NCBI GenBank assembly: GCA_026770705.1
Contig: JANJGN010000101.1
Span: forward strand, 1,054,001 to 1,118,000
Origin: Isurus oxyrinchus
Taxonomy: Eukaryota
Reading direction: 5' to 3'
Length of the DNA: 64,000 bases
Shown one piece after another: positions 7,148-62,386 of the stretch (positions are counted from its first letter, which is position 1; each line of letters begins with the position of its first letter). Below the pieces are notes generated by a model. That model was not told the DNA's origin. It did no database searches and worked only from the letters and a program-made list of their open reading frames with translations. A program made the position numbers and the translations under genes.

Positions 7148-7539
7148 GTGACAATCTTTCAGTGATGAGCAGAAGGCGTTCAGAACATTTGTTGAAAATG
7201 CACGGATCATCAAACGACATTCTGTCTGCCATTTATTATCCAGTCCTTGCAGCTCTCGGGGTTCCAGGTAAAGTATTGTAATTAGTATTTTGATACGGAA
7301 ATCGGTTATCTGCAGGAATTCTACCTTTTAAAAGCATTGTATATCCATTGCGATATACCCATTCTCCCATTTCGCCCTTTATCTGTACAATTCTCCCCAT
7401 TAATGGAGCAATTTCCCTCTTTTAACAAGTATATTTTACCCCTCTAAAAGAACATTTTCCCCACTTTATAGGTATAATGTCTCAATTTTGACAATATAAT
7501 TTGTTCCCTTTGCCTAAAATTCTCACCGCTAATGGCTTA

Positions 7540-7830
7540 ATAATATGCTATTAAAGGTGCAATTCTGCGCTGTTAGTGGCATAATATAACCTTGTTAAAA
7601 ACAAAATTTCACAATTTAAGTGCTATCATATCACCCTGCAAAGTGTGTAATTTCTCGCTGTTAATGGTAAAATATTACCCTGTTCAGGGTGAAATTTCTC
7701 GTTGTTAGCGGTATAATATCCCCCCTTATAAGGGTGTAATTTTTCGTTGTAAGTGGTATTATATTACCGTCTTCAACGGTGTTTTGCACCATTTAGTACT
7801 GGTGTATTTTCACACTGTTATCACAGTGCA
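7540..7830. repeat. Degenerate AT-rich minisatellite in GPCR1 intron
   Basis: Recurring gtgtaatttctcgctgttaatggtataatat-like units. Confidence 0.55.
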
Positions 7831-7841
7831 ATTGCCTTTCC

Positions 7842-8230
7842 ATTCTGTTACTGGCATTGTTGCTGAAGGAGAATTATCACATTGTAATCACGGTGCAAGT
7901 GTAATTGTCTTCTGTTACTGCAGGTGTATTTTAACAGTGACATTACAGTCTAAATGTTTTTCCATTGTGTTTCCAGTATCGTTACTGAAGGTGAATTATG
8001 ACATTGTAATCACGGTGTGAATGTGATCACCTTCTGTTACTGACAGTCTAACTGTGGTTGAGTGATCACACTTTAATCACAGTATGAATATGTTCGTGTT
8101 CTGTTACTGACAGTTGAACTGTGGTTATGTTATCACACTTTAAACGCACCGTGAAATGGATCATCTTCTGTTACTGACAGTCGAACTGTGGATGAGCTAT
8201 CACACTGTTTTCACGGTGCAAATGTAAATC
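7842..8230. repeat. ~67-bp minisatellite in GPCR1 intron
   Basis: ttctgttactg recurs at ~7843, 7910, 8032, 8099 and 8166, the last three followed by acagt..aactgtgg..atcacact. Confidence 0.8.
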
Positions 8231-11049
8231 TGTTGTGTTGTTCACATTGACAATGATCGAACAATTCCCACGAATGTTTCATTGATAGAGAGCAATGTAA
8301 CATTCAATATTCCCCCAATGAATTTGATGGAAGGACATCATGAGCACCCAGTTTTTGACAGATGTATGAACAATGTAATAATAGACTTTTGATGAATATT
8401 CTATATTAGCACCACGATCACAGAGGTGTGTTTCTGCTCTCAGTCTCCAACACTAATTGGTTCATGAGCTGCTGCTGATGCTTCTACTTGACCACTGTTG
8501 ACGCCGGAATTTCCTTCTGCTGATATCACCGGGCAATGTCCCACATTTTCCCGTCTCCGCTGTTTATCCATATTGAATGAGGCTGCCTACTTGGCTGCAT
8601 CTTTCACATCTCAGGTGCAATGCTTTGATTTGAAATATCCATTACAGGACAACGTTGATAGTTGATCCCGAAAGTGCAGTGCAGTACGGAGTCAGTGCTG
8701 CATTGCAAGAGGGACCTCACTCAGAAGGAGACTTCGGTTTCTGCCATTTCCAAAGGTTCAGATCGACACTGATCTTCCAGTTGACTATATGTGAGGAGCT
8801 AGGATGTATCTTCACATGCAGGTAAACGCCCTGTCTGGAAGATCAGAAATCATTCATTGCCCCTTTACTCCTCGCTGTATGTCGATATTTTTGAGCAGGT
8901 TTAATTCCCAAAGTTCACAACAATGAATAATTTTCAATAATTATTGCCAATTATTATATAGGAAAGGAACTATATTGATCTTCAGTGAGATATAATCCGT
9001 GCCCTTGTTAGTTTCCACACTTCTTGTTGCTTGTTTTGTTACTTACCTTCGTCATTATTTCCTGCAATGCCTTGCAGATGCGTACACTTTCTTCTTGCTT
9101 ATACAAAAATTCTAGGTTGGTTTCTCAGTTTTAACGATGTCTTTTGTTCTCCATTAGTTTTTATTAAAATATTTGACATTCATATAACTTTGACCTGACC
9201 TATATTGAATTAAGATTTCAATTTACAAAGCTGAAGCACTTGCCCATTGCAATTGCGCAACTGGGGAACACATCTGAAATGTACAAATTCATGCAGAATC
9301 CTATACAATTGTTGATTTGTTTATAGTTTGAGCAGTAACCTTCCTGTATTCGTTCTCTCCCAAACTCACACACACACAAACTCAGTCTCTTTCCACCTTC
9401 TCTCTTTCTCTCTCTCTCTTTATTGCAGCTAACCTGGCGGTGATTGTGATCCTTTCTCGAGTAAAATGCGGTATCTCCACCTGTATAACCTATTATTTAC
9501 AATCCCTGGCGGTGTCAGATCCCCTGCTCATTATAACCGCTGTGATATTGAACCGGATTGCTGGTATTTATTTCCCACTCAGTTTCCTGTCAATCACACC
9601 AGTATGCAGTCTCCGTGAAGCCCTAATATATTCAGCCATAGACAGCTCTGCCTGGTTAACTACAGCTTTCACCTTTGATCGATTTGTGGCCATTTGTTGC
9701 CAGAAGCTGAAAGTAAAATGTTGTTCCAAAAAAACGGCGACACGGTTATAGGGACAATCTGTGCAATCAGCTGTGTCAAAAACACCTTCCAGTATTTTAT
9801 ATACGAATCTTTGTACATAATTGACGATGTGCCCTGGTTCTGCGATGTAAAAGTGATATTTTATACCTCACTTGCATGGATCGCCTATGACTGCATTCAT
9901 CACATTTTAACCCCTTGTCTCCCATTCATTCTGATTTTACTGCCCAATGTCCTGACAGTCAGACACATTCTCGCAGCCAGTAGAGCTCGCAGGAGACTCC
10001 AGACCCGGAGAAATGGAGACAATCAGCGTGACCCTGAGATGGAGAAGCGGAGAAAGTCCATCATTTTACTCTTCTGTGTATCGGGAAGTTTCATCCTCTT
10101 ATATTTGTTACTTTTTATAACTTTCCTCTATGTGCAAATTGGAAATGTTAAATACTTTTCAAGCTCTGAAATCAATCTTTCAACATTCATTCTTGAGGAA
10201 AAAGCATACATGCTTCAGTTTTTGAGTTCCTGCGCAAACCTGTTTATTTACGCAGGGACCAGAGTAAATTCAGAGAGGTGTTAAAGAATGGGGTGAAATA
10301 TCCATTACTTGAAATTGGTAAATTATTTAGACGAAAAGGACAGCAGAATCCAACTTCAACTGTACACAAGATTCCATCCTTTCCCCTTCTTGTCGATGCC
10401 ACGCATTGTTTTCCATTCTAGTTCACAGTCACTCAGTTTGAAAATAAGACTGTTAAAGGCGCAATACATCCGAGCACAATTAAGTGTCAGTATCTGTACT
10501 CTGGTAGTTAAATGTTCTCTTCCCCATATTTTCTGTGGTCTGTCTTATTCCCAGCAGAATCCAGGGTCCTTGTAGTCCTCGTAGTATCTCTATGTTCATG
10601 TGGACGACTAAGTGTCGTATCTCTGATTTCTTACACATTCCAACATGAAATGTGGATAAAGCAACTACAATCTCCCTGCGTCCCGCCCCAGTAATGATTC
10701 TGATCTTGATGGTTGGATACGCTTCGAAATGGATGCACATACTATCCTCAGGAATTGTTCTCCACTGACCAAGCACCGCTTTACAGCAAACACCTGAGCC
10801 CCTAAATATACAAACAGCGGACTGTGGGATTGTGATGGCAAAACACCATCAATTCATCTTCTGCACTTTCCGTTGGCCAATTGGGAAGAATCCCATCTCT
10901 AAAGGGGCCCCAAAAATGACCAAAAAAATCATTTTTTAAAAAGTTATAAAACTGCATAAGAACATTATCTTCATTTATCATTTATAAATCTTCAGCCGAT
11001 TTCATTTCCAGCTGTCCTGTTAGCCACGTTGATAAAGGTAGAAGGAATT

Positions 11050-11337
11050 TTTTTATTCATTCAATCGCTAAATGCTCTTGTTCAGAGAGCATTTAAGAGT
11101 CACGTAGAGGCCAGACAGCAGATGCTCTTTCCTGCAGGAAATAATTAAACCAAATGGGCTTTTACAGCAATTAGCAATGGTTTCATGATCATCATCAGAA
11201 GCTTAATTAAAGATTTTTATTGAATTCAAATTGCCCAACCTTCCACGGTGGGATGTGAACGTAGGTCCCCAGAGAATTAGGTTGGGCCTTATGCAATGTT
11301 AACCTGGTCATAATGCTGCTACGCCACCACCTCCCAT
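11050..11337 (-). mobile_element. tRNA-derived SINE (shark-type, LINE-derived 3' tail)
   Basis: Minus-strand head gggaggtggtggcgtagc, B-box-like gttcacatcccacc, and tail shared with other copies in the window. Confidence 0.7.
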
Positions 11338-11499
11338 CAGTAGTTAGCTGGTCCTACCAATTTATCTTAACAGTTATTCGACAACAGGCCCAGACGTGAT
11401 CAACTAAAATGTCAGTGGATAGCTTCAATATTCGGGGCGCGAACTTAGTTGCAGCAGTGGTACCGAAGTTTAGCTGTGGTTTGCTGGGGCACCCTCTAC

Positions 11500-12030
11500 C
11501 ATGACCCAGAATTCCATTTGTGAAAGAGGCCTGTGGGAGTATGCCCCGTATTTGCCTGAAAGAGGTGAATCGATGTTACACTGAAGTCACACATCCTGAC
11601 GACTGAAGTGATGGCAGTATACCGAATGTGGACTAGAAAACGCATTAATACATCATTCGGCAAACAGAAGCTCCAGTTCTGCAAAACTGGCACTCCACCA
11701 GTGTTTCACAATGGGCTTGCTACCTTAATATCATGGAATTTAATTTGGAGGAGTTCTCCTGTCACAAACTATTTGGGTGTTATTAAGGCTTGTTTTTGGA
11801 GGCCTTGTGGTTGGTTTCTGGATTTCCCAGATGACTGTTCTGCAGCCTGTAAGGAGAGGCAGCAGATCTGATGATGTGTCCAGGGGCCAGCGATGCCTCT
11901 GAACCAGCAACGTTACAGCTGAAATGCAGTGTGAGCTATGAAGAGACGAAGCTCTGGCAAATGCAATCTGTTGAAATGGAGCCAGACTCTTTAATGCTCC
12001 TTGACAGCGGCAGGAGTTGCCATTGCATTG
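11500..12030 (-). mobile_element. Highly decayed PIF/Harbinger-like transposase remnant
   Basis: Broken minus-strand similarity to PxAVK..SGSFQ..AHxCIxxVT and later DDE segments; many indels. Confidence 0.35.
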
Positions 12031-13792: not shown

Positions 13793-13824
<32 letters not shown>

Positions 13825-15372: not shown

Positions 15373-15394
15373 GAGATTATAATCCTTTGTTTGT

Positions 15395-19698: not shown

Positions 19699-19699
19699 A

Positions 19700-24812: not shown

Positions 24813-27038
24813 TCATCTTTTAAATAATTTAACAAGCAGGTTCAATGGGATTTTCACACCATTCTTTAACTCTACTCTGAATTTACTCTGGGTCCCTGCA
24901 TAAATAAACGGATTGACGCAAGAACTCAGGAGCTGAAGCATACGTGCACTTTCCTCCATAAGAAAATTTGATTCATTGAAATTGGTAGAGTCTACATAGC
25001 TAAGATTCGCAATTCGGACATAGAGGAAGTTTATAAGTCTTAACAAATATAACAGGATGAAACTGCCCGAGATACAGAAGAGCAAAACCATGGACTTCCT
25101 TCTCTTCTGCATCTCTGGGTCACTTTGATTCTCTCCATTGCTCTGGATCCGGAGTCTCCTGCGGGCTCGACTGGCCGTTACAATGTGTCTGATGGTCAGA
25201 GCATTGAGCAGTAAAATAAGGAAGAAGGAGAGGCAAAGGGTTAAAACGGCGATTATGCTTTCATAAGCGACCCATTCAGGTGCCGTATAAAATATTGATT
25301 TTGAGTTGCATTGCCAGGGTATATTGTCAATGATAAAGGCAGGCTCACACATAAAATACAAGGGGATTCTTTTAACGCAGTTAAGTACAGAGACAGTTGC
25401 TATCACCGCAGCCGCCATTTTCTCAGTGCAATATTTAATTTTCAGCTTCTGGCAGCAAATGGCTACAAATCGGTCAAAGGTGAAAGCCATTGTTACCCAG
25501 ACAGAACAATCGCTGACTCCATAATTTAGCACAAGTCTGAGGCTGAAGACCGGAGTGATGGCCAGGAGACTGAACAGGAAATAAATACCTATAATCCAGT
25601 TTAATATCACAACTGTGATCCCGACAAGAAGATACATCACGGCCATGGACATCAAGTAGTAAGTGATACATTTGGAGAGACCGCATCTTCCTCGAGTCAG
25701 TATCACAATCACGACCAGATTAGCTGTGACAGCGAAACGCAGCCAGCGAATAGCCAATTTTGAGAAAGAAATTTAGAACATAAAATGTTGGAAATTCTCA
25801 GTCAGGCAGCAGTTGAAAAGAGAGGAACAAGTTAGCATGTCAGAAAGATGATCTGGAGGAAAATATCTTAAAACACAGCAATCTGTTCTGTACTGTCAGC
25901 AACACTAAGGGCTAACTCAAGGTGAACATTGAACGTCCTGCATTGTGACCCTGAAATACAATCAATGTTGTTCTCATTCAACGTTTAGAGACGGGAAAAT
26001 ATAAGAATACTCTGAAACATTGGAAAATCGAAGATTAACAAATACATTATAGAACTTGAAAAAAGTTCAGCGAAAAAAAAAAGCCACTACTTAACTGAAA
26101 AGAAGATGAAGGAGATGTGATGCATCTGAGCTGTAACAATTCGAAGTTAAAGGAACAAGGCTTCACAGCCACGAGTACAGCTGATCATGCTTACTATGGC
26201 TCAGTTTACAGCAATCTCACTTTTGAGTCAAAAGGTTTAGCATTCAAGCCCAACTGTTGGACTTCAGCAACGTTGCACTGCCCGATATGCTATATTTCAG
26301 CTAAAGCAAAAGACTGAGGACCGGTCATGAATACAAAATCTTACTTAAGAAATAGCTGTTATTCACATTCCAGCACAAGGAGAAATATATGCACACGGCA
26401 AAGTGAGGTAATTCAACAGCTGTGTCAATAACACCATAGAGCTACATTTATAGCATGATAAATCATCCATGGTGACAGTGTCAATAATACAATTGATTTA
26501 CATTGCACTGTGATATTAGTGTGCTTAATACTTCGCCCACGTTAATAATGACAATAACAACATCAAATTACGTTTAGACTGAGAGGCAGCACTGCTAAGT
26601 TGGGAGAAAAGTTTTAGTTAAAGAGATGGAACGGCATTGGCGAAGCAAACATAGTAATCCCTGAAATGGAAGTAAGTATAGTGGCAATGGGAAGAAACTG
26701 TTCTCGTGAAGGGGAGAAATTATAGCCTTAAAGTGGAGAAAAGAGACCAGTAATGACCAGCAATATTGCAAGGAAAGGGAAGGTTTAATCTCATTTAAAA
26801 GAAGAATGCACTAAACGTGGAGATAAGGATACTGCAAAAAAGGGAAAACATAAAAAAACAAATTATCCTGTTAATGGGGTGAACCATAGAGAAGCAGTAC
26901 AGCTAAATTAAAGAAGTGATAGAGTGAAAAATGATTCTGGTAACTGGTAACTAACCGTAATACTTTATCTGGAATACCGATAGCTGCAAGAACGGGATAG
27001 TAAATGGCGAACACCAGACCTTTTGGTATCCCATGCAT
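24813..27038 (-). pseudogene. GPR139/GPR142-like GPCR, copy 2 (exon 1 27038-26969, exon 2 25723-24813); open frame but splice donor is AT instead of GT
   Basis: Exon 1 MHGIPKGLVFAIYYPVLAAIGIP then ATAAAGTATT (copy 1: GTAAAGTATT). Exon 2 is stop-free with DRF and NPFIY, but has D2.50>Y and LTPCLPF>LTLCLSF. Confidence 0.8.
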
Positions 27039-27088
27039 TTCTCTCATAAGCTCCAAGTGCGCTCTGTGCTACACCGAAAGACTTTTAG

Positions 27089-27182
27089 ATTTATACATGA
27101 TGTCAGACTCTAGGGAGACAATGAGAAGGTTTGGCTTTTTACATTAATTACACTAACTGAAAAAAACATTTTAGTGCAGCTG
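27089..27182 (-). promoter_or_regulatory. Proximal promoter of GPCR copy 2
   Basis: Minus strand: CAGCTG (-144), CTCATTGTCTCCCTAGAG (TCCCT at -78), TATAAAT (-57). Confidence 0.65.
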
Positions 27183-27360
27183 CTGCCACGCTCGCATTTA
27201 TATTTTTGATGGAATTGAATCTGTTTTCAAGGACACTGGCGCGGCTCCAAATTGAAATAATCAGACAGGAGAGTACAGTCCAAGTTGCATTTTTTCCTAA
27301 AATTTAACTAACAAGCCAAATAAGCCATTGTAATTGTGAAAGTGAGCACTGTGCACGAGC

Positions 27361-29125: not shown

Positions 29126-30339
29126 CAGGATGTTTACATTCAGTGTAGAAATGTGCAGCTCGGCATGGTTATATTCACAGTGCGCACGCCTGGTTTGGCA
29201 CAGTTACTTCCATTGTGGACTAGTTCAATTCAGTTAGTGTAGCCATGTCAATCCCGGCAATAACGAAAGTGCACAGGTGTGTGAATTTACATTTTGTGTG
29301 GCAAGATCCAGTTCAGGACGTGTGTGCTTCGTGCTTTCAGTCTAAGCTCAGTGCTCTCACATTCAGAGAAGATAACCTCCTGTTGAGCATGATTAAATTA
29401 ATGATGGAGCGCTCCAAATCAACATGGTTATATGCCATGTAGAAATTCCTGTTCAGCTCGTTAGCAATCACTGTTTAGTGGAAAACCAGTTTAGGAGATT
29501 ATCACGCTGGTGTGACTGTCCAGTTCAGTAAATTGCATTCACTGCATTCAGGTTAAATTGTGCACAGCTCCACTCAGTACGAACAGGCCAATTTCTATCC
29601 TGTTACACTAAATGTACATGGACGACTTTTTGCCCGATTATTGTCAACTTTGTCCAGTGGAACACAACTACGTACAATGTGCACAGCCCCGGCTGAGAGC
29701 ACTTTCTTTCTTGCAGTGGAAAATTTCACTTCAGCGTGAATACATTCCATATAGAATAATCAATTTCATTACTGCTGTATTCGATGGAGACAGGACTGGC
29801 CGAGCATGGTTATGTTTCGTGTAGATTTATGAAAGTCTGCTCGGTGTTAATAAATGTGTACATGGACATTTGCATTCAGACTGGACTGGTTTAGTTCTGC
29901 ATTCTTACTTTTAATTTGACCTTCTGTGGTTCACTGTGGTGGACAGTCCCAATGGATCACTGTGAACCTTTTAATTTCCCAGCAGCTATGCTTCGTGTGC
30001 AGATGTCTTGACCAGTGAGGTTACATTCAATTTGCGTAATTGCAGTTCTGTAGCATGATTTTCAGTGCAGACTGATCTCGGCCGGAGAGATTTTATTCAT
30101 TGTGATTTTCCACAACAAAATCCAGGTCTATTGTTAATGATAAAGGAAGGTTCATAGGCAAAGTACCAGGGGATGAGGAGGTTCTGGAGACTTTGGAATT
30201 GTCTTCTCCAGAAAACAAAAGACGGCAGGGGCACTAAATATATTCAAGGCATAGTTAGACAAATTATTGATCGACAAGATTTCCAATGGTTACTCAGTCT
30301 GACAGGAAAACGGAGTTAAGGCCAGGATTACATTAATCA

Positions 30340-31215: not shown

Positions 31216-31249
31216 GATTCAGAATGTTTCCGTTTCGTATTTTGAGTGG

Positions 31250-31400
31250 CTCAGAAAACTGACTGGAAAATAAACAGCCGTAAACCGGCTTAATATCAGT
31301 GTAATGATAATAACATGGAGATCTGTCACCGCCATGGACTCTGCGTATCTGCAAAGACCACATCTTCCTCGGGAACGGATCACGACAGTCAGCTAGTTAG
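31250..31400 (-). pseudogene. GPCR copy 3: truncated exon-2 relic
   Basis: Pyrimidine tract and ccttacag acceptor (31401-31447), then AN*LTVVIRSRGRCGLCRYAESMAVTDLHVIIITLILSRFTAVYFPVSFLS; similarity then stops. Confidence 0.85.
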
Positions 31401-41075: not shown

Positions 41076-41983
41076 TTTGGTGGATAATTTTTTCCGGACA
41101 CTGAAAGAAAGTATGAGGAATTAACTATCTGTGCAAGATTTATAACACTGCTTCACATGTGCACATTGAAGATAGCAGTTAAAATGGGGCCTGTCCATAT
41201 TCATTGCAAGATGACTGAACTGGGCCTTTGCAGACTTAGTGCAGCCGTGCATAATCTGGCCTGGCGCCACGGAAAGCGATTTACGGGAAAAGGACGTGCA
41301 CACTTACCCTTCCTTATCCGTCATGAACTAATGTAACGTGGCAGAAATGGAGCCTCGACACATCACATAACCATACCGAACTGGAACGGTCCACATTAAC
41401 TAGAATCGTGCTCAACTGGACCTCCGTTTACGGAGTTTAAGCGTACTCTCTATAATTATGCATAATTAACGCATAAGCGCCTGATTGCATCTGACCAAGT
41501 AAAACGTAGCCGTTCACAGCTACACAGCTATGCACACTCACTACAGCTGGATTTGACATGTCTGCAATGAATTTAACTGATGTGGAATAATCTACACTGC
41601 AAGAAGCCGTACAGAAGATTTGAGTACTTTAAAGCTAAATAAAGGTGATGAGTTGAACATTTCCATACCAAATGCGAACAGAATGAGACAAAAAATGCTG
41701 GAAATACACAATAGACCGTTCAGCATCTGTGCAGAGAAAACGGTAAAAGGTTCAGATCCATGACTTTACATCGAAGTTGGGGAATAGGTAGCAATGGAAG
41801 AGTTTTTGTTTTCACTATAACGGCGGGAAACGGTTGTGATAAAGGGCTGATGATAAACAAACATCAATGTAGGTTTGTGTTAATGTGGAAGACAGAAGGG
41901 CACTTTGTGAGGATGTTCCTCCAGAACAATGTCAGTGACCTTGAAGAGCTTTCTACTCCGTCAAAACAAAAATAATTTCCCGT

Positions 41984-42080
41984 CAGCTGCAGCACGAGCA
42001 TCTTTCTTTCAATTAGCGTAATCATTGCAAAAGATCAAAGCGTCTAACTGTCTCCCTGGAGGCTGGCGTGAGATATATAT
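41984..42080 (+). promoter_or_regulatory. Proximal promoter of GPCR copy 4
   Basis: CAGCTG (-147), CTAACTGTCTCCCTGGAG (TCCCT at -78), TATATAT (-57). Confidence 0.65.
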
Positions 42081-42130
42081 GTGACTGTCTTTAGTTGTGG
42101 TGCAGAACACACTCGCAGCTGGTGACAGAA

Positions 42131-44499
42131 ATGCACGGATTGCCAAAAGGTCTTATTTTCATCATATATTATCCCGTCATTGCAGCGATCGGGATTCCAG
42201 GTTAAGTATTTTGGTTTGCTATGCTATTGAAATCATTGTTTAATCACTTCTCTTTGGTTTGCTTTCATTTTAGTGAATCATTGTTCGTATTTAGGAGCTT
42301 TGCTTCTACATGGTATGATATTCTTTCTCCCATTAAACAGGACAATCTATCAACATTACGGCGACATCGTCCCAATTTATCACGCTAGACAATGTCACTT
42401 TTTTCCACTTCAAGGGAAATGCTTAATTTAATTCTCCATTTTAGCAACAAAATTGTTTTCTTTTACTGACATGATTAGTCGTCATCACATGTCGAGTCGC
42501 TCAAGTTTGTCTGTGCCATTTCTTCCCTTGAACATAGTTTCTCCCCAATGCAAGAATAATATTTCAGCAGTAACAATGAACTATCTTCCCTGAGCTAGTA
42601 ACATTTAGTCAGTTTAATTGGACACTTTCATCTGTTTACCGCCACCGTTCGAGGTTTTAGATGTTCTTTTATTTTATTCTTGGTATTTTTAAAAAGCGTA
42701 ATGTATAACGCTGTTACCCCTGAGGAAATGTTTTTCTATTGTTTCAATGGCATTGTCACCGTCGGTGAATTATTATAGAGGAACTGTATCTGTATTATGC
42801 ATTATCTCATTCTTTTCCCTTTAACCTTTCGTTGGAATATGAACAGTATTTATCTGATAAATCTGTGCAGAATATTAAATGACTGGCCCAGGGTTTCTTG
42901 CCTTAACGGAATCCTGGCACCCTGGGCGGCGAAGAATTCTCAGGGAGCTGAAGTTGGGCTTGAATCCAGGACATTTTGACTCTAAAGTTTGACGTCTTTC
43001 AACTTAACAGCAACTGAACCTTAAACTGTGTGTGGATTTCCACCCTGCTGTGAAGGACAGTTGTGTTCGCTGCACGTCATCATAACTCAGGAGTTTTAGT
43101 TACCCTTTATTTCCTTCCAAAGGAGTTTTTTCTTTCCATTTTAGCTGTTCTCATTTGCTGGATTATGCCCACAAGAGTAACACTTTGTACTTAATTCCAT
43201 TCAACGCCATCTACTCAGTTTCTGTCAAATTATTAGGTCGATTTAACATTGTGTACCTTTCTTTTTCCAATGTCCTAGCCTGTTCTTCTCTAAACAGCAA
43301 GCAAGCGGATACTTGATCGTTTTTCATTTAACTGAGTAACAACGCAGCAATTTGAATATTCACTATAGGGCCGAGCCCGCATTCCTCCTGTAAATCAGCA
43401 CAGTATTGACAACTTGCTGCATTTTGGAAAGAGTCTTTCTTTCTCCACTGGAGCATATAAGTCATAGGACTGAAATGGGAACATTGCTCTCTTTTCATGA
43501 CCAATGCTGTATTTGTGAGTTTCTCAACATTTTCTGTTCTATATTCATTTGTCCCCACCGCAAACTTACTGGTTATATTCCTCTGTCACAGCTAATCTGG
43601 CAGTAATTGTGATCCTGTCTCGAGGAAGATGCGGTCTCACTGGATGTATCACATACTAACTGATGTCCATGGCCGTGACGGATCTCCTGATCATGATCCT
43701 TGCTGTGATGTTAAACCGGATTGTAGGTACATATTTCCCGTTCAGTTTCCTCTCCATCACTCCGGCCTTTGCTCTTAGTCTTGTGTTCATATATGGCGTC
43801 AGGGATTCTTCTGTCTGGGTGACAGTTGCTTTCACCTTTGATCGATTTGTAGCCATTTGTTGTCAGAAGCTGAAAACCAAATATTGCACCAAGAAATCGG
43901 CAGCTGTGGTCATAGGAACTGTCTGCGTTGTGCATTGTGCTAAAAAAATACCCTTGTACTTTGCTTGTGAACCTTCTGTTATCACGGACAATACACCCTG
44001 GTACTGCAAACTGAAGCCAATATATTATTTGTCACCCGGATGGGTGGCATATGACAGCATAAATGCCGTTTTAACCCCTTGTCTCCCATTCGTTCTTATT
44101 TTGCTGCTCAATGTTCTGACGGTCAGGCACATTGTTGTGGCCAGTCGAGCCCGCAGAAGACTGCGAGCCCACAGCAAGAGCGAGAAACAAAGCGACCCAG
44201 AGATGGAGAAGAGGAGAAAGTCCATCGTTTTACTCTTTGCCATCTCGGGAAGTTTCATCCTGTTATATTTCCTCGCTCTTATAACTTTCCTCTACGCACG
44301 AATTGCCAGCGTTAGTTATTTCGATGGCTCGAATTTCAATCAATCAAATGTTATACTGGAGGAATGCGGACTTATGCTGCAGCTTTTAAGTTCCTGCATC
44401 AACCCCTTTATTTATGCAGGTACCCAGAGTAAATTCAGAGAGGAGTTAAAGAATGGTGTGAAATATCCATTGAGTCTGATTGTTAATTTTTTTAAATGA
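42131..44499 (+). pseudogene. GPR139/GPR142-like GPCR, copy 4 (exon 1 42131-42200, exon 2 43592-44499), single premature stop
   Basis: Exon 1 MHGLPKGLIFIIYYPVIAAIGIP, donor GTTAAG; acceptor tcacag. Exon 2 ANLAVIVILSRGRCGLTGCITY* with TAA at 43657-43659 (Tyr in paralogs), then 278 aa open with DRF and NPFIY. Confidence 0.9.
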
Positions 44500-45864: not shown

Positions 45865-47250
45865 TGAGTCCCACGTCAGTGGTCCGGAAACTATTGGAGA
45901 AAATTCTGAAGGAAAGAATCTACCTTAACTTGGAGAGAGAAGGTTTGATAAGAGATATTCAGCATTGATTCTTCAGAGATAGGTCATGCCTAAAAAATTT
46001 GCCTGAATTTTTGAGGAGGTGACCAGGTGTGTACATGATGGTAGTGCAGTTGATGTAGTTAATATGGATTTCAGAAAAGCCTTTGACAAGGTCCCATATG
46101 GCAGCCTTATAAATAAGGCAAATACACATGGGATACAGGGTAATTTGAAAAGGTGGATTATAAATTGGCTTAGTTGTAGGAGACAGAATGTAATGATAGA
46201 AGGCTGCTTTGGTGACTGAAAACCCGAGTCCTGTGGTGTACCACAGAGATCTGTGCTGGGTTGCCTATTATTCGTTATTTATATAAATGACATAGATGAC
46301 TATGTGGGGAGTAGGAATAGTAAGTTTGCGGATGACACAAAGATTGGCCGGTTGGTTAACAGTGAGGTTGAGAGGCTTGGGCTGGAGGAAGATATCGGCG
46401 TGGTGGTCAAATGGGCAGATAAGTGGCCGATGGAATTTAACACTGAAAAGCGTGAGGTTATACACTTTGGAAGGAGTAATTTGACAAGGAAGTATTCAAT
46501 GAACGGCATGGCACTAGGAAGATCTGAGGAACAAAGGGACCTTGGTGCATGTGTCCATAAGTCTCTGAACGCAGAGGGGCATGATAGTGGGGTGGTGAAA
46601 AAGGCATTTGGGACAATTGCCTTTCTCAATCGAGGCACGATTGCAAAAGTAGAGGGGTCATGTTGGAGTTGTATAGAACGTTGGTGAGACCACAGCTGGA
46701 GTGCTCTGTGCAGTTTTGAACGCCAAATGATAGGAAGGATGTGATTGTGCTAGAGGCGGTGTAGAGGAAGTACACGTGGATGCAGCCTGGGATGAACCAT
46801 TTACATTATAAAGAGTGGTTGGATAGAGTTGGGTTTTTTCGGCGAAACAGAGAAGACTGAGGAGCGGCCAGTTCAAGGTGTACAAGCTTGTGAGGGGTAT
46901 TGAAGGGGTGGATAGGGACAGCTGTTCCCCATAGTCAGAGGCTCAGTCACGAGGGAACACAAGTTCAAGGTGAGGGGCAGGAGGTTTCGTGGGGATGTGA
47001 GGGAAAACCTTTTTTACCCAAGTATTGGGGACGGTCTGGAATGCGCTGCCTGGGACAGTGGTGGAGGCGGGTTGCCTCACATCCTTTATAAAGTGTCTAG
47101 ATGAATACTTGGCACGTCCTAACATTCAAGGTTGTGGGCCAAGTGCTGGTCAACGGGATTAGTTAGGTAGGTCAGGTGTTTCTCACGTGTCAGTACAGGC
47201 TCGATGGGCCGAAGGGCCTCTTCTGCACTGTGCGATCCTTTGATTCTGTG
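45865..47250 (+). mobile_element. CR1 LINE RT region and 3' end
   Basis: VDVVNMDFRKAFDKVP, IYINDID..SKFADDTKIG, and 3' tail gatgggccgaagggcct..gattctgtga. Confidence 0.93.
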
Positions 47251-56264: not shown

Positions 56265-58800
56265 CCTCGGTAATATCCGTGTAGATTCCACAGACCACAT
56301 CTGGATTGAAGGCTATGAGGACGATAACGGGAACATCTGGACAAAATCTCCAACAATCATCATCCTGTTCTTCCTGAGCATTTTCGACAGCATTGCTGTC
56401 ACTCTGGTAAAGGTGAGAAGATTCAATCCACTCATGCTACAATCTGACAGAAACGGTTTGAAAATTTTCTAAACATTTCAACAATTAAAAGTAATAACAT
56501 AAATGCACCTGATCATAAATATCTGCTTCATTATTGTCTCCTTCTTTTACAGATGAAGTGATCGGTTGAATTTGGACCTCGTAGCTTTTCCTCAGCTGTA
56601 TTTTAAGATCTCTGTATTCCAATATAAAATCTGTTCTCTTGGTGATTCTAAAGGTGAAATGTCTTCACTTTGTGATCCCGAATCTGTAACCGAACCTGTA
56701 GCAGTATTTCCGATTTCATGTATGAAATATGTGAGATGAAAATGGTTGTAATGTAATTGTAGCATCTAATTTCCCTGGAGTTAGGATTTGAATTGTAATT
56801 AAGTAACGTTTTCATTCGTTATTCATTATTGCCCCCTTCCCTTTCCTTTGAGCCACAGTTTTCTCTTTCTGATCTATGTTCCAGTGGTACATATAATTTA
56901 CCAAATCAGAGCGCATGTGTTCTGTTCCCAACGTGACCTCAGGCATTGTATTCACTTCTGTTAACTTTAAAATAAAATTTCCTGTGAAATATTCTCTGAT
57001 ATTACTAATAAATCTGGAATGAAAAGTGAGCTAACTGTGACTTTGCTGAATTCCTTTCCCCAAGGCCCATCGACACTGCTGCATTTTCCCTGTTACACAT
57101 TTCTCTCAGTTTTACCAGTCCTGTCGGGGTTCTGTTTACACCCATCGCCCCATCCGTGTAAGGAGACCTTTACCTCTGCCTGTTTCTGGCTATTGCCCGA
57201 GGTGGAATGATTGAACAGGGAGAGTCACCTTGGTGACTTCACTCTGGATGGTCACAGACACATGTCTGGCAATTCCAAACTGTAGGGTTCGGCTTCATCA
57301 GAGGCTGATATAGGACAGGAAATTGGAGCAGAGAACTTCCTTTAAAATACCCCATCAAACACTCCCACCGTTGGTGCAATCATGGTCAGAAAAAGGTTAA
57401 AGATCCCTCTGCAATGTCCGATTAAACACTTTGAAGTGGGGATGCCACAGGCTAGATATATAACACAGGCAGAATACCGAGCACAAACCAAGGGATGTTT
57501 CCAGGGGCTGGGGCGTGTCTGGCATTGCTATATTATTAAGTACAAATCCTGCAAATTATTATAGAGCTTTAGGTCTATTGGACATACGGGGGGCTGGGGG
57601 GGGGGGGGGGGGGGGGGTCAAAACTGCGAAAATACTCAAAGATGGGGTCCAACTTTATGCTGCAAGTAACCATAAACATGGGGCTTGTTCACAGATCCTG
57701 GGGCCGATCGGATACTGAGACACTGGCTTTCCATTTTCTCTTAAATACACAAATAGACGTAGCCTGCACCTCGCCCTGCCACACCCCTTTCCGTTCAGCA
57801 TATACATGGTCCTTATTCCAGTAAACGCAGGCCGACTCTCCACTTCCACCTTTTCTGTTAAATCCATTAGCGCTGTCATTCTCCCTTCTGCTTTGATAAT
57901 GAACTGTATTCCTGATCAGCTCATTCCTACTGATACCATCTCCCTGAACTCGCTGAACATCACCCCAGGGGTGAAAACAGAAAACGCTGGAAATATCAGC
58001 AGGTCTGAAAGAATCTGTAGAGGCAGAAACAGAGTGGTCTTCTCGATTCGGTATGACCCTTCTTCAGCTGAACTCGAAAGGTCAACTCTGTTTCTCTCTC
58101 CTCAGATGCTGTCAGGCCTGCTGAGTTTTTCCAGCAATTTTTGTTTTTGTTTCAGATTTCCAGCATCCGCAGTATTTTGCATTTATCACCCCAGGGATTT
58201 CGTTCTACCTGCTTCATCGTTTCGTCAGACGATACTTCAGAGCCTCCCGATCACGGGAATAACAGCAGAAGTTTAGCTTCATATCCTGCTATCTGCCAAT
58301 ATCATCCATCTGAAACTGCGCCACTTTTCTCCAATTCCTCAGAGTTCAGGCGCGAGGTTCCATGTTGTTGAATAAAGGAAGGGTTAGGCAGAGAAAACTT
58401 ACCTACACATCTTCAAGACTCGGAATGATATTTATGAATGAGTGGAGTTTTTGCTTAAACCCGGTCTCTCTCCCAATCTCTCTCCCTTCCTCTACCGCAA
58501 AGCCCGTCAGGACATCTGAATCAACAACAGAAAAAGTTGTAAAATCTCAACGGTTCATAAAGCATCTGTGAAGAAAACGACAGGGTTAACGTTTCGAGCC
58601 CGCATGATTCTACTTCAGAGTCTTCTTATCTGAACAAAAGTCATAAAGACTCAAAACGTTAATCCTGTCTTTATCTCCACAGGTGATGCTGGACATGCTG
58701 AGGTTTTGCAGCATTTTCTCTTTTAGTTTTAGATTTCCAGAAACCGCAATATTTAGCTTTTACTGTTCAGGACTTCCCTCCTCTCATGGCTGCATTTTTT
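56265..58800. repeat. Segmental duplication copy C
   Basis: Collinear with ~2810-5300, including both mini-Penelope insertions (57971-58184 with perfect TSD atcaccccaggg, and ~58520-58760). Confidence 0.92.
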
Positions 58801-59559
58801 TTAACCGCTGTCATTGCACATGGGATTTGGGAGTGGCTTATTGATGCAATATAATGGGGATAAAACAGTAAGGCAGATTATTATCTGAATGGCTATAAAT
58901 TGAGAGAGGGGAATGTGCAACGAGACCTGGGTGTCCTTATTGTTTCAGCAGAATGGATGTGTGAGTGACACACTTCTAGCTCCTGGAGCAGCTGAACAAC
59001 CGTTCCCCAGTGAGAACAGACAATTAGTGTTTTGGCGGATCCATACTTTCTTCTGTTGTTCGTCCAGCGCTGTAAACATCATCCCAGGCATTCTCTGCTA
59101 TGCCCCCGCCCCCTCCACACGCACAGGGAGATCCTGGTGTATTGGTAATGTCACGATGCGGATGAGCTAAAAAGGCAGGCTCCCGCTCTAGCACAAATGT
59201 TCAAGCCCTGTTACAGCAACTGGCTGAATTTCCGTCAAAAAATCAGGAATTGAAACCCTTTCAGGAATGGGGATGATTTCGGTCTAAATATGAAATCTCT
59301 GGTAATCTCCAGGAATTCTCCACATTCTGGCTGCTCCACGAGATTCCAGACTCACAGCAATGTGGCTGGTCCTGAAATAGTCTGGACACCGTGAGTTATA
59401 TCAAAACGCTGCAGACAATCCAAACCAGATGGACAACTTCTCTTCAAGAACGTCCCCACCAACAACTTATCCAGGGAAATGAGGGATGGAAATAAACACT
59501 GGCTTTGTCTGCAATGCTCCATTCAAATAAAGAATGCAATAAAAATCCAAACCTATCGC

Positions 59560-60570
59560 AACGGAACAGAGGAACAGGAGAATGCCATTCAACCCATCGA
59601 ACCTGTCCCACCTTTCATTGCGATCATGGATGATCATCTCCTTCAACATCTTTCACCCACACCATCCTCATACCGTTTATATCTTTGGTATTTAGAAATC
59701 TGCCATTCTCTGCTTTAAACATACTCAATGATTATGCTTCGACAGCTCTCCGGGATGCAGAAATACAAACATTCGCAAACCACTGAGTAAAAAACAATTC
59801 TCCTCAGGTCAGTCCTAGTGGCTTTACCCTTATTTTGAAATTGTGTCCCCTGTTTCTAGATTCCCCGACCAGGGGATACATCTGACCTTCATTTACACTT
59901 TCTTCCATTCAGGTGTTTTGTTTGTTATAATGAGATCTTTTTGCTCATGTTTGGAAACTCTGGAGAATACAGGTCCAGTGTCCCCAATCCTTCTTCACAG
60001 GACAGTCACGCCATCCCTGATGCAAGTCTGGTGAGCCTTCGATTCACTCCCTCAATGACAATTACTCCCTTCCGAATGTAAGGGGGGCAAACCTGCACAT
60101 TGTACCCCAGGGTTGGCCTAACCAAGATTATATACAAAGGAAATGAGACTTCATTATGGCTGTATTCAAATCCACTTGTGAGAGAAGCTAACATTATATT
60201 CGTCTTCCTAAATGCTTCATATGTATGTCAGGTTTCGGAGACCTATTGATGAGGGTACACAGGCCCCCTTGTACAGCTACATTTTCCAGGTTCTCACGTT
60301 TTATGAAATAATCTGCACATCTGTTGATTCTACCAAGCTGGTTAACCTCGCATTCTTCCACGTTAAATTTCATCTTTCCTGTTCTGTCCCCCTCACCAAG
60401 TCTGTCCAAATCGCCTTGAAACCATTTTTCACCTTCCTCACAATACACGTTCCCACCAAGCTTTGTGTCATCCTCGAACTTGGAAATATTACATTTGGCG
60501 CTCATATCCAAATCATTCATATGTTGTGAACAGCTGGCTCTCAAGTAGTGAGCCTTCCAATTCCCCACTG
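59560..60570 (-). mobile_element. CR1 LINE RT region and 3' end
   Basis: ORF 60194-60568 MNDLD..ISKFEDDTKLGG..LQGDLDRL-like; ORF 60006-60194 LVRPTL.Y.VQ..PY.RK. Confidence 0.9.
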
Positions 60571-61484
60571 GCCAGATGCTGACAAAGTTTGATATTTCAC
60601 TCTATACTCCATCACCCCCACCACCCCCACCGCCACAATAAAAAACACACACTTAGGTCGCCGGCGCCCCTCACCCCACACCTCACACTTTGAAATGACA
60701 TGCTTCAGTTACTGCTGCAGCAGCAGGAGTCCTTTGGATCACGTAAGAGTGTCACAACACTGATGGAAGCCCTTGAAGCATTAGTCTGTTTCTCGCTACA
60801 CAAAGGTAGCGAGGGCTGCTGATTATTCCCAGCATTGCTGTTTTTTATTTCAGTTCCGAGCACATTGGCCCCCCCTCTCTCTCCTCTCCTGAACATAATT
60901 TTTCCAGATGAGTTCAGGGGACATTTGAATTGACGAATTTCACTGGAACATAACTTGTGCAGTGGAAATAATTCTTTATTTGAAACGAGGAGACGTCCCG
61001 CTCCAAGATACTGTGACTGTTCAGCTCTAAAAACACTGGAATAAAATCACAGAAAGATTTTGAAAAGCTGAAATCACTGACTTTCGAACGTCTAAAACCC
61101 ATCCTCCCATCTGCAGGTTGGTCCGAAATGTTTTGAACAAGGTTTCCCTGGGATAGTGGAGACACTGCAGCATGTCCGTCCCTGGACTGTAACCTGCACA
61201 AGTGGCCTTATCCTCCAAAGCCCCTTTGGGTAATGACATGGAACTCGAGCCTGGTGGGTGGGAATTTCACACACCAGGCCCAAGGACAACAGGAGAGTTG
61301 GAATAGCCTGGAAACCAGCAGGACAAACAGGACTGAGGTAAATTACTTCCCAAATGCACCGTTTCTGTTAGTCATTGAATCCTGGCGGTGAAAGATGAAA
61401 ACTGGCCTCACCCTGTGCTCATCACCGAGGTGAAGGGATTGGGAATAAAACAGGGTCAACTCGTATTGATAATGGATATTCTTG

Positions 61485-62386
61485 TCACTGTTTAATAAAT
61501 TTAAAAATTACAGAAAAGGGATATTTCACCACATTCTTCAGCTCATTTCTGAATTGAGTCTGGGTCACTGCATAAATGGCCGTGTTAGTGCAACAACTCA
61601 GGAGCTGAAATATAAATCCCAGTTCCTGCACAAACATAGGAAGGTATACAGGAATAGCATCTAACACATATAGCCTTTTACAAATAGGATGTATCATAAA
61701 AACTACCCACAACAGGATAAAATTCCCCGATATAGCAAACAGTAAAATGATGGATTTCCTGCTTTTCTCCATCTGTGGGTCCCTGGGTCTCTCCCCACTG
61801 CAGTGAGCCCGAAGTCTCCTACGGGCTCTGCTCGACACTAAAATATATCTGACAGTTAAAGCGTTCAACATCAAAATCAAAACAAATGGCGCAAATGGTG
61901 TTAAAATATAATGAAGACATTCGATTGCTGCCCACATTGATGAGAATTCAGCATCCATCACTAATGTGCAAAACCAAGGAGCATTGAAAAGCGAATATTG
62001 ACCTACATACATAAAGTACCAGAATGTATCCTTCACACAGAATAGCAGACTGACTGTTCCGAGAACCACAGCCGCCGTATGCTGGGTGCAATATTTTGTT
62101 TTCAACTTCTGGGAACAAATAGCCAGAAATCTATCAAAGGTGAAAGAGACTGTGAACCAGACAGAACAATCTGTGGCTGCATAAAGCAGGACTGCATGGA
62201 TATTACACACTTTAAACCTCCACAGGAACTGAAATTGAGCCCAGTAAAGAATAGCAATTTGCCTGAATATGAGATCAAGGATAACGACCAGTAGATCCGC
62301 GGTTGCCATGGACACCAGGTAAAGGGAAACACATTTTGAGAGACCGCACCTTCCCCGAGACAGGGTCACAATAGTCAGTATGTTCA
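61485..62386 (-). CDS. GPR139/GPR142-like GPCR, copy 5: intact exon 2 of a divergent paralog (exon 1 not found in window)
   Basis: Acceptor ttccttacag at 62387-62396, phase 1 as in paralogs. 300 codons stop-free: VNILTIVTLSRGRCGL..ADLL..VCNI..FTFDRFLAIC..PWFC..LTPFAPF..FILLW..SCCTNTAIY. Confidence 0.85.

What the first reader, a model, noticed from the sequence alone, without database searches (positions are those of the whole stretch)
7198..62386. Birth-and-death cluster of GPR139-like GPCRs: candidate uncharacterised chemosensory receptor family
Seen: five paralogs in 55 kb in mixed orientation. Where both exons are visible (copies 1, 2, 4) there is a 70-nt coding exon 1, a phase-1 intron in TM1 (G.P|AN) and a very short N-terminus. 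Four are independently disabled by different lesions. Intracellular motifs (LSRGRCGL, DRF.AIC.QKLK.KYC, DP.M.K.RKSI.LLF) are conserved, while extracellular loops and outer helix ends vary. Known: GPR139 and GPR142 are low-copy aromatic amino-acid sensors in bony vertebrates, and cartilaginous fishes have very few classical ORs. Inference: clustered expansion, frequent pseudogenisation and outward-facing variability are the pattern of chemoreceptor or other environment-facing receptor repertoires.
Basis: partly seen in the sequence, partly recalled or inferred. Interest (0 to 1): 0.85.

Follow-up and report, generated by a model that had tools for sequence, protein, structure and literature searches.

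The report
Decaying shark orphan-GPCR gene cluster
This stretch of shark DNA holds five old copies, four clearly broken and one doubtful, of a receptor gene family that has grown to well over a hundred genes in sharks and rays and has no known function, which makes it a testable candidate for a missing set of shark smell or taste receptors.

Summary
The window has exactly five copies of one rhodopsin-class GPCR at the stated coordinates. Three keep the 70-nt first exon and the phase-1 intron in TM1. Four are disabled, each by a different lesion. The fifth (c5) has an open exon 2, but no first exon lies in the window and it shows signs of relaxed constraint.

The copies belong to a very large elasmobranch family: 1,773 and 1,940 database proteins at E<=1e-10, and all 240 listed are from sharks. 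I counted at least 137 in horn shark by eye. NCBI gives them inconsistent automatic names. Human GPR139 is the nearest solved relative, at about 21% identity. The family is not orthologous to GPR139, and it is also distinct from a conserved single-copy orphan that sharks also have.

Copies in the window are old (dS 0.6-1.3) and evolved mostly under purifying selection (omega about 0.3). Selection was weaker on the outward-facing half (0.32-0.40) than on the inward half (0.17-0.27).

No RNA data could be reached, so the chemosensory role remains untested. My ten paper searches found no description of the family. The scan has already noted this family on at least eight other pieces of this genome, and one of those was followed up.

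The parts
7028..7197 (+). c1 proximal promoter block (-170..-1). It holds a TAATTA-type site, a TCCCTGGCG site (O/E-like; the consensus is recalled) and TATAAAT about 55 nt before the ATG.
   Evidence: Alignment A1. 65-69% of bases match in all three pairs, while the next 300 nt upstream match 0-2%.
7198..7267 (+). c1 coding exon 1: 70 nt, ATG..CCAG|GT, phase 1.
   Evidence: Exon-1 HMM E = 3.3e-11.
9429..10334 (+). c1 exon 2, a pseudogene. Frameshifts lie near 9728-9734 (an A7 run) and near 10260, and the usual stop is absent.
24813..25723 (-). c2 exon 2. The reading frame is open, but 9 of 81 family-conserved residues are changed, including D2.50->Y and the Cys and Pro I take for C3.25 and P5.50.
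   Evidence: Pfam 7tm_1 E = 7e-15.
26969..27038 (-). c2 coding exon 1 (70 nt). The donor dinucleotide at 26968-26967 is AT, not GT.
   Evidence: (E = 1.2e-16).
27039..27208 (-). c2 proximal promoter block, homologous to those of c1 and c4.
30103..30174 (-). c3 second fragment (end of TM4 and ECL2, ..YFAYEPSFIINNRPGFC..), followed by a stop.
   Evidence: Family HMM E = 6e-4; translation.
31240..31400 (-). c3 first fragment (TM1 end to TM2). The acceptor is kept, there is a TAG at the third codon, and a short in-frame loss follows RGRCGL.
   Evidence: E = 2e-12.
41961..42130 (+). c4 proximal promoter block.
42131..42200 (+). c4 coding exon 1 (70 nt, donor GT).
   Evidence: (E = 2.2e-14).
43592..44499 (+). 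c4 exon 2 with a premature TAA at 43657-43659 (ITY*LMSM). It is otherwise open to the normal stop.
   Evidence: Pfam 7tm_1 E = 5e-18 on the part after the stop.
61485..62386 (-). c5 exon 2, open, from a different and old subfamily. Exon 1 is not in the window. 7 of 121 subfamily-conserved residues are changed.
   Evidence: Pfam 7tm_1 E = 5.5e-17.

Best explanation
The window is a decaying segment of a very large, elasmobranch-wide multigene family of class A GPCRs.

Shown:
- There are five two-exon paralogues from at least three old lineages. c2 and c4 are sisters, c1 sits in another subclade, and c5 belongs to a second subfamily with orthologue-like partners in three other shark orders.
- The copies diverged long ago (dS 0.6-1.3) and mostly under purifying selection (omega about 0.3). 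They then died one by one through different lesions.
- The family is a clade of its own. It is separate from a conserved single-copy orphan that sharks share with bony vertebrates. Human GPR139 is its nearest solved relative.

Inferred mechanism:
- Each receptor has almost no N-terminal tail (about 7 residues).
- The predicted pocket (outer parts of TM3 to TM7, ECL2, ECL3) differs from paralogue to paralogue.
- ICL1, ICL2 and the start of TM6 are nearly invariant.
- I read this as many receptors that bind different small extracellular ligands and feed one shared intracellular partner.

Most likely use, which is inferred and not shown: a chemosensory repertoire in nose, mouth or solitary chemosensory cells. 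I put the chemosensory part alone at about 0.4. The evolutionary and structural part I put at about 0.9.
For: - Five copies, their structure and their lesions.
- Family size: 1,773 of 2,883 candidates and 1,940 of 3,431 candidates at E<=1e-10. All 240 listed rows are sharks. By eye I count 53 + 84 rows from Heterodontus francisci, and 62 of the 84 lie on one 59.5-Mb record. At the 50%-identity level there are 109 clusters at E<=1e-30.
- Taxonomic range: all 14 named clusters that I looked up with at least 35% identity to c5 are elasmobranch, comprising sharks, two skates and a stingray.
- Nearest relative: a profile search against the PDB gives GPR139 at 7e-24 and the next hit at 3e-17.
- Structure: the AlphaFold model has pLDDT 86 and pTM 0.84, with 7TM plus H8 and TM1 starting at residue 8.
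- Trees: the expanded family, the conserved orphan group and a salamander group each form one side of a branch (SH-aLRT 88, 100 and 100). c5 sits in a 99-supported clade with Heptranchias, Heterodontus and Pristiophorus proteins. c2 and c4 are sisters (95).
- dN/dS: overall, by side.
- Outward variability.
- Promoter: a block conserved about as well as coding exon 1.
- ESM Atlas: the nearest non-chordate look-alikes are lineage-expanded echinoderm and rotifer GPCR clusters carrying nematode-chemoreceptor Pfam labels. This is weak evidence.
Against: - There is no expression evidence. No RNA holder was listed, and the four runs laid are genomic DNA whose contigs run unspliced across the c5 acceptor.
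- In the catshark 'Sensory Shark' paper (PMC11979771, passages read), the 50 most specific 'brain & olfactory epithelium' genes include no GPCR.
- Omega on the outer half is below 1 in all six pairs, so no positive selection shows at this resolution.
- The outward bias is modest (odds ratio 1.5-2.0), and most GPCR families show such a bias.
- The coding region has an intron, unlike OR, TAAR, V1R and T2R genes (recalled).
- Every copy in this window is dead or doubtful, so the window itself says nothing about present function.
- The O/E-like site matches only 6 of the 8 specified bases of the recalled consensus in each copy.
Confidence: 0.45

Rival explanations
1. The family is the same expanded, functional one, but it is not chemosensory. 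Its members would sense internal ligands (peptides, amino-acid metabolites, lipids) or act in immune cells or neurons, as in other lineage-specific GPCR expansions such as Mas-related or chemokine-type receptors.
For: - The nearest solved relatives after GPR139 are peptide and chemokine receptors: CCR1, PrRPR, TRHR, CCK-A and NTSR1.
- ECL2 is predicted as a beta-hairpin, as in peptide receptors (recalled).
- No GPCR is among the top 50 olfactory-enriched catshark genes (PMC11979771).
- A scan note places family members next to SRCR-type receptor genes elsewhere in this genome (s1-897978; unchecked).
Against: - More than a hundred paralogues per genome, a high pseudogene load and paralogue-specific pockets are unusual for receptors of endogenous ligands.
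- The roughly 7-residue N-terminus leaves little surface for large peptide or protein ligands.
- The promoter block carries homeodomain and O/E-like sites, although this is only a resemblance.
Confidence: 0.3
2. The expansion is mostly genomic debris. Copies would have been spread by segmental duplication in repeat-rich shark DNA, with few functional members and many automatic gene models that are artefacts.
For: - Four of the five copies here are dead and the fifth is doubtful.
- Some annotated homologues have N-termini made of retroelement-like peptide (P0005 and P0008). Many listed lengths far exceed 326 aa.
- The window holds RT-like ORFs and a very high-copy repeat.
Against: - Pairwise omega is about 0.3 over dS 0.6-1.3. 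This means long periods under purifying selection.
- 71 of the 119 listed c2-type proteins have the canonical length (320-330 aa) and start with MH.
- 81 to 121 alignment columns are at least 95% conserved.
- The exon-intron structure and the promoter are conserved, which argues against retrocopies.
Confidence: 0.1
3. These are true GPR139/GPR142 genes, that is, aromatic amino-acid sensors that simply multiplied in sharks, as the database names suggest.
For: - GPR139 is the best PDB hit and ranks second in Foldseek.
- TM1, TM2 and TM3 share motifs with it (..YY..L...G.PAN.., A.AD.LV, S.W.TV..T.DR..A.C) in the alignment.
Against: - c2 against GPR139 scores only 31.6 bits at E = 1e-6, and identity is 21% in the Foldseek alignment.
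- NCBI also names members after GPR15, capa, FMRFamide, sex-peptide, TRH, PrRP, cysteinyl-leukotriene and vasopressin V2 receptors.
- In the alignment, the TM6 W-A-P-R of GPR139 faces y-l-l-f in the family profile.
- No bona fide GPR139 sequence was available as a stored protein, so I could not make a rooted tree.
Confidence: 0.03

Closest known systems
Human GPR139 (PDB 7VUG, 9M42) and its paralogue GPR142. These are low-copy class A receptors; their activation by aromatic amino acids is recalled, not checked here.
   Same: - It is the best solved-structure match by sequence: E = 1e-6 for the single sequence and 7e-24 for the profile, 22 bits ahead of the next hit.
- It shares the TM1 ..G.PAN.. 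motif, the TM2 A.AD motif and the TM3 DR(Y/F)-A-C motif.
- It has a similar overall 7TM fold (Foldseek rank 2, TM-score 0.69/0.79).
   Different: - Identity is about 21%.
- There are hundreds of copies instead of one or two.
- The TM6 W-x-P-R of GPR139 is not kept in the c2-type.
- The N-terminus is very short.
- The family is not orthologous to GPR139.
A conserved gnathostome orphan, auto-named 'probable GPR139' or 'GPR142' (Latimeria XP_005988539 group). It may be the 'GPR210' set of PMC6504862; I could not check that identity.
   Same: It is a GPR139-related class A receptor of similar length (about 325-345 aa). Sharks have it too (S. canicula P0416, 66% identical to the coelacanth protein).
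   Different: - Its branches are short and each species shows one or very few listed proteins from sharks to squamates.
- It is only about 30% identical to the expanded family.
- It forms a separate clade with SH-aLRT 100.
Vertebrate chemosensory GPCR repertoires (OR, TAAR, V1R/ORA, T2R).
   Same: - The repertoire is large and lineage-specific, arranged in genomic clusters with many pseudogenes.
- Intracellular motifs are conserved (DRF-VAIC resembles the OR MAYDRYVAIC motif, which is recalled).
- Ligand-side positions are variable.
- The proximal promoter carries homeodomain-type and O/E-like sites plus a TATA box.
   Different: - There is no sequence kinship beyond class A.
- The coding region is split by a phase-1 intron in TM1.
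- Expression in sensory cells has not been shown.
Salamander 'probable GPR139' group (Pleurodeles XP_069092602, Ambystoma, Lissotriton).
   Same: It is the nearest bony-vertebrate sequence to the expanded family in my searches (30% identity, E = 6e-27). It groups with the family when the tree is rooted on the conserved orphan.
   Different: It looks low-copy in the one cluster I looked up (5 members from 3 species). Its branch is very long (1.4), so the grouping may be long-branch attraction.

Membership tests
Class A (rhodopsin-like) GPCR, Pfam PF00001 | A match to 7tm_1 above the gathering score. | tested here: met
   c2, c4 and c5 score 55.6, 65.8 and 62.5 bits against a cut-off of 30.5. 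The longest c1 piece scores 30.0, just under the cut-off.
Class A (rhodopsin-like) GPCR, Pfam PF00001 | Seven transmembrane helices plus helix 8; a DRY-type motif at the TM3 end and an NPxxY-type motif in TM7. | tested here: met
   The AlphaFold model of homologue P0124 has 7 TM helices plus H8 at pLDDT 86. DRF and NPFIY appear in the family consensus. The c5-type has NT(A/C)IY instead.
GPR139/GPR142 (orthologues) | GPR139 or GPR142 is the closest characterised relative. | tested here: met
   It is the best PDB hit with both the single sequence and the profile.
GPR139/GPR142 (orthologues) | Orthologue-level similarity and a position inside the GPR139/142 clade. | tested here: not met
   The score is 31.6 bits at E = 1e-6, and identity is 21%. 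I could not build a rooted tree with bona fide GPR139 because no stored sequence was available.
GPR139/GPR142 (orthologues) | A low, stable copy number across vertebrates. | tested here: not met
   1,773 and 1,940 proteins pass E<=1e-10, and all listed ones are sharks.
GPR139/GPR142 (orthologues) | Agonist-pocket residues of GPR139 in TM6 (W6.48 and R6.51; their role is recalled). | tested here: inconclusive
   In the profile alignment, W-A-P-R of GPR139 faces y-l-l-f. The c5-type keeps W. The importance of these residues comes from memory, not from a call.
GPR139/GPR142 (orthologues) | Activation by aromatic amino acids. | not testable with these tools
   This needs a heterologous assay.
Conserved gnathostome orphan (Latimeria XP_005988539 group) | Grouping with that clade in a tree. 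| tested here: not met
   The orphan clade (12 rows, 3 of them sharks) is separated from the expanded family by a branch with SH-aLRT 100.
Chemosensory-type GPCR repertoire (a functional class, not a homology family) | A large lineage-specific repertoire in genomic clusters with frequent pseudogenes. | tested here: met
   Four of the five copies here are disabled.
Chemosensory-type GPCR repertoire (a functional class, not a homology family) | Variability concentrated on the ligand-facing half, with positive or relaxed selection there. | tested here: inconclusive
   The outer half is more variable (0.97 against 0.62 bits, p = 9e-7; 29 of the 40 most variable sites). Its omega is higher (0.32-0.40 against 0.17-0.27). 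Omega stays below 1, and site models could not be run because no coding sequences of other species were available.
Chemosensory-type GPCR repertoire (a functional class, not a homology family) | Expression in chemosensory cells. | not testable with these tools
   No RNA run was listed. The runs laid are DNA. Supplements of PMC11979771 are closed.
Chemosensory-type GPCR repertoire (a functional class, not a homology family) | An OR-style promoter (homeodomain plus O/E sites near the transcription start). | tested here: inconclusive
   A conserved block at -170..-1 holds TAAT-type sites, TCCCT(G/A)G(C/A)G and TATA(A/T)AT in 3 of 3 copies that have an exon 1. The O/E-like site matches 6 of the 8 specified bases of the recalled consensus. 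There is no binding or expression evidence.

The most novel reading that the evidence does not exclude
This family is a further, so far unrecognised vertebrate chemosensory receptor family. It would be an elasmobranch-wide repertoire of more than a hundred two-exon class A receptors per genome. It would derive from the GPR139-related branch of amino-acid and peptide sensors and be driven by an olfactory-receptor-like homeodomain/EBF promoter. It would supply the odorant or tastant diversity that the very small OR, TAAR, V1R and T2R sets of sharks lack.
Probability: 0.35. Interest if true: 0.9.

Novelty: new member of a known kind. Interest (0 to 1): 0.65.

Why it matters
[quoted passage not shown] The catshark has 2 OR, 6 OR-like, 3 ORA, 3 TAAR and 2 TARL genes according to PMC11979771 (passages read). 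V2Rs are the only large known family.

A second large GPCR family is present in every elasmobranch I sampled. It has paralogue-specific pockets and a shared signalling face. The papers I could search do not describe it, and it sits in databases under misleading automatic names.

If it proves chemosensory, it adds a new receptor family to vertebrate chemoreception and makes an old question directly testable. If it does not, it is still one of the largest lineage-specific GPCR expansions in a vertebrate, and its members should no longer be annotated as GPR139.

The window itself contributes the gene model (70-nt exon 1, phase-1 intron in TM1, a conserved 170-nt promoter) and a clear example of the death side of birth-and-death evolution.

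Tried and rejected
Expression test. The look-up of sequencing runs listed no RNA holder. The four best holders turned out to be genomic DNA of related organisms: they are 95-99% alike, and their contigs cover intergenic DNA and cross the c5 acceptor unspliced. No statement on expression is therefore possible.

A by-product. Of the 16 listed base differences inside the c5 coding part, 14 change the amino acid and 2 do not. By a hand calculation this is unlike the family's long-term omega of 0.3 (p about 0.003) and compatible with neutrality. However, 54 further differences across the 3-kb stretch were not shown, and paralogue contigs cannot be excluded. I use it only as a hint that c5 is not strongly constrained.

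c5 exon 1. tblastn with four homologue N-termini, reading the only weak hit at 63651-63668, which lies on the wrong strand and has no donor, and two exon-1 HMMs over all six frames found nothing upstream of c5. Only the exon 1 copies of c1, c2 and c4 were hit.

The collections that related-loci searches do not hold shark genomes, so I did not use it.

Intron position in human GPR139. A paper search gave nothing usable, so this was not tested.

PMC7270403 held GPR139 only in its reference list.

Pfam on nine other ORFs of the window gave no family at E<=0.01. That includes the two RT-like ORFs, so calling them retroelement-derived rests on a recalled motif.

The careful (bootstrap) tree did not finish in time. 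Both trees are quick trees with SH-aLRT support only.

Literature. All ten searches found no description of this family. I read passages only of PMC6504862, PMC7270403, PMC11979771 and PMC12294341. For all other papers I saw only search listings. The expression tables of PMC11979771 (its supplementary datasets) could bear directly on the chemosensory claim, and I could not see them.

Full report
**What is in the window.**

The ORF list and a tblastn of the window with its own receptor ORFs show five related 7TM regions. A profile of 88 family proteins run over all six frames finds the same five and nothing else above noise. Pfam places them in 7tm_1.

Reading the sequence gives these models:
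- c1 (+): exon 1 at 7198-7267, intron of 2,161 nt, exon 2 from 9429.
- c2 (-): exon 1 at 27038-26969, intron of 1,245 nt, exon 2 at 25723-24813.
- c4 (+): exon 1 at 42131-42200, intron of 1,391 nt, exon 2 at 43592-44499.
- c5 (-): exon 2 at 62386-61485.
- c3 (-): two remnants at 31400-31240 and 30174-30103.

Exon 1 is 70 nt (ATG plus 22 codons plus one base). The intron is phase 1 and splits ..G(V/I)P|AN.. just before what I take to be N1.50 of TM1.

An HMM of exon-1 peptides from annotated shark homologues hits exactly these three exon 1 copies (E = 3e-11 to 1e-16) and no other place in the window. Most of the 29 homologue N-termini printed begin with the same 23 residues. The modal lengths of 325 and 326 aa (36 and 23 of 119) equal exon 1 plus exon 2.

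**State of the five copies.**

- c1 has two frameshifts, one at an A7 run (9728-9734) and one near 10260. It has no stop at the usual end and carries L for the P of NPxxY.
- c2 has an open exon 2, but its donor is AT (26968-26967). It has changed 9 of 81 positions that are at least 95% conserved in 119 annotated relatives, and none of the 119 is as deviant. The changes include D2.50->Y and the Cys and Pro that I take for C3.25 and P5.50.
- c3 keeps the acceptor but has a TAG at its third codon. It survives only as two pieces about 1.07 kb apart where about 0.18 kb is expected, and it has no exon 1.
- c4 has a TAA at 43657-43659 and is otherwise well kept, with 3 of 80 conserved positions changed.
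- c5 has an open exon 2, but three things make it doubtful:
  - No exon 1 was found in the 1.6 kb that the window leaves upstream.
  - 7 of 121 subfamily-conserved positions are changed, and only 3 of 120 annotated relatives are as deviant.
  - Of the 16 listed differences to related genomes in its coding part, 14 are non-synonymous. That list is incomplete, so this is only a hint.

My reading is four clear pseudogenes and one copy of uncertain status. All lesions rest on this one assembly.

**Age and mode of evolution.**

Nei-Gojobori estimates on exon 2:

| Pair | dS | omega |
|---|---|---|
| c2-c4 | 0.58 | 0.29 |
| c1-c2 | 0.79 | 0.31 |
| c1-c4 | 0.91 | 0.27 |
| c1, c2 or c4 against c5 | 1.2-1.3 | 0.33-0.35 |

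These are old duplicates that spent most of their history under purifying selection and died late. This is what 'birth-and-death' means, although nothing here is a recent birth.

In a quick ML tree (51 rows, SH-aLRT only; the careful search did not finish):
- c2 and c4 are sisters (95).
- c1 lies in another subclade (97).
- c5 lies in a second subfamily, inside a 99-supported clade with proteins of Heptranchias, Heterodontus and Pristiophorus. The c5 lineage therefore predates the split of these shark orders.

**The family.**

- c5 exon 2 finds 1,773 proteins at E<=1e-10 among 2,883 candidates. All 120 listed are sharks: by my count 53 Heptranchias perlo, 53 Heterodontus francisci, 13 Pristiophorus japonicus and 1 Scyliorhinus torazame. 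The best identity is 79%.
- c2 exon 2 finds 1,940 of 3,431 candidates. All 120 listed are sharks of ten species. By my count 84 are Heterodontus, and 62 of those lie on one 59.5-Mb record.
- At the 50%-identity level there are 109 clusters at E<=1e-30 and 152 at E<=1e-10.
- I looked up twenty representatives. All 14 named ones with at least 35% identity to c5 are elasmobranch, comprising sharks, the skates Leucoraja and Rhinoraja and the stingray Hypanus. None was a chimaera.
- The names NCBI gives are inconsistent: GPR139, GPR15-like, capa, FMRFamide, sex-peptide, TRH, PrRP, cysteinyl-leukotriene and vasopressin V2 receptor-like. They are best-hit labels, not orthology statements.
- Some gene models carry retroelement-like peptide as a false first exon (P0005, P0008).

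**Relation to known receptors.**

- Human GPR139 is the only solved chain that c2 hits below 1e-5 (E = 1e-6).
- With a family profile it scores 7e-24, against 3e-17 for the next hit, CCR1.
- Foldseek on an AlphaFold model (pLDDT 86, pTM 0.84) gives generic class A peptide receptors, with GPR139 second at 21% identity.

GPR139 is thus the nearest characterised relative, but this is not orthology.

The roughly 30%-identical bony-vertebrate hits resolve into two groups:
- A conserved orphan, found from sharks (S. canicula, 66% identical to the coelacanth protein) through sturgeon, teleosts and amphibians to turtles and squamates. It scores only 70 bits against human GPR139.
- A salamander group.

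In a 34-row quick tree, the conserved orphan (12 rows, three of them sharks), the salamander group (3 rows) and the expanded family (19 rows) are each one side of a branch, with SH-aLRT 100, 100 and 88. Because sharks have both the orphan and the expanded family, the expanded lineage is a separate and old branch. The link to the salamander group sits on long branches and may be an artefact.

**Where the proteins vary.**

I mapped the model's helices onto 71 canonical c2-type proteins.
- Mean column entropy is 0.97 bits on the outward half (N-terminus, ECLs, outer helix halves) and 0.62 on the inward half (Mann-Whitney p = 9e-7).
- 29 of the 40 most variable positions are outward. They cluster in outer TM3, TM4, ECL2, outer TM5, outer TM6 and ECL3.
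- ICL1 (0.24 bits), inner TM3, ICL2 and inner TM7 are nearly fixed.
- Among 35 independent nearest-paralogue pairs, differences are 1.5-2.0 times more frequent on the outer half in all three identity bins.
- For the window's own copies, omega is 0.32-0.40 on the outer half and 0.17-0.27 on the inner half in all six pairs.

It also shows purifying selection on both halves, and an outward bias is common among GPCR families. It fits ligand diversification with a shared intracellular partner. It does not single out chemosensation.

**Promoter.**

The 170 nt before the ATG of c1, c2 and c4 match at 65-69% in all three pairs, close to coding exon 1 (71-77%). The next 300 nt upstream match at 0-2%. 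The block holds TAAT-type sites, an invariant CTCCCT.G.G and a TATA box about 55 nt before the ATG.

The resemblance to olfactory-receptor promoters (homeodomain plus O/E sites) rests on recalled consensus sequences, and the O/E-like site matches 6 of the 8 specified bases. Scan notes report the same module at other family members of this genome, and one follow-up reached the same cautious view. These are leads, not independent evidence.

**What could not be done.**

- No RNA run holds the stretch. The four runs laid are genomic DNA.
I therefore ran neither a family-wide promoter test nor codon site models.
- Ten paper searches found no description of the family.
- PMC6504862 (passages) mentions only extra GPR139/142-like orphans in coelacanth, gar and fishes.
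- PMC11979771 (passages) lists the tiny classical repertoires of the catshark and notes that no GPCR is among its 50 most olfactory-specific genes.

**Verdict.**

A chemosensory role is the most attractive reading (about 0.4), but it is untested. A non-chemosensory receptor role is a serious rival (about 0.3).

The same family has already been noted by this scan on at least eight other pieces of this genome, one of which was followed up.

Noticed in passing
window 63626-64000: A very high-copy repeat. The summed contig depth in four DNA runs jumps from tens or hundreds to between 1e4 and 4e6, with many internal joints. It is probably a transposable element lying in what would be the c5 intron or upstream region.
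   Followed up: no
window 46253-46687 (+) and 60194-60568 (-): Two ORFs carry a ..F(A/E)DDTK(I/L)G.. peptide that recalls retroelement reverse transcriptase. Pfam gave no family at E<=0.01. The same kind of peptide forms the false N-terminus of annotated homologues P0005 and P0008, so some database gene models of this family begin in retroelement fragments.
   Followed up: partly
window 7028-7197, 27039-27208 (-), 41961-42130: A 170-nt promoter block is conserved about as well as coding sequence among c1, c2 and c4. It holds TAAT-type sites, CTCCCT.G.G and a TATA box. The scan noted it separately as s1-900800.
   Followed up: partly
proteins P0416-P0533: A conserved, apparently single-copy GPR139-related orphan is present from sharks to squamates. 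It is auto-named GPR139 or GPR142, and in two species 'transmembrane protein 183A isoform' (P0419 Stegostoma, P0517 Hyla). The last name suggests read-through gene models with a neighbouring gene. It is distinct from both human GPR139 (70 bits) and the expanded shark family.
   Followed up: partly
window c2 (24813-25723) and c4 (43592-44499): Both sister copies carry F in place of the family's nearly invariant TM3 cysteine (C83 of P0124; I take it for the disulfide partner of ECL2). The loss therefore predates their split at dS 0.58.
   Followed up: no
window c1, c2, c4: the ECL3 part of exon 2: An N-x-S sequon sits at the same place in ECL3 (NLS, NES and NQS in c1, c2 and c4; translations), while the roughly 7-residue N-terminus has none. 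Any glycosylation site would thus lie in ECL3 rather than in the N-terminal tail.
   Followed up: no
window 61000-64000 against runs X1-X4: Contigs of two coded organisms match this locus at 95-99% across coding and non-coding DNA alike. The locus, including c5, is therefore shared with close relatives of the sequenced animal.
   Followed up: partly
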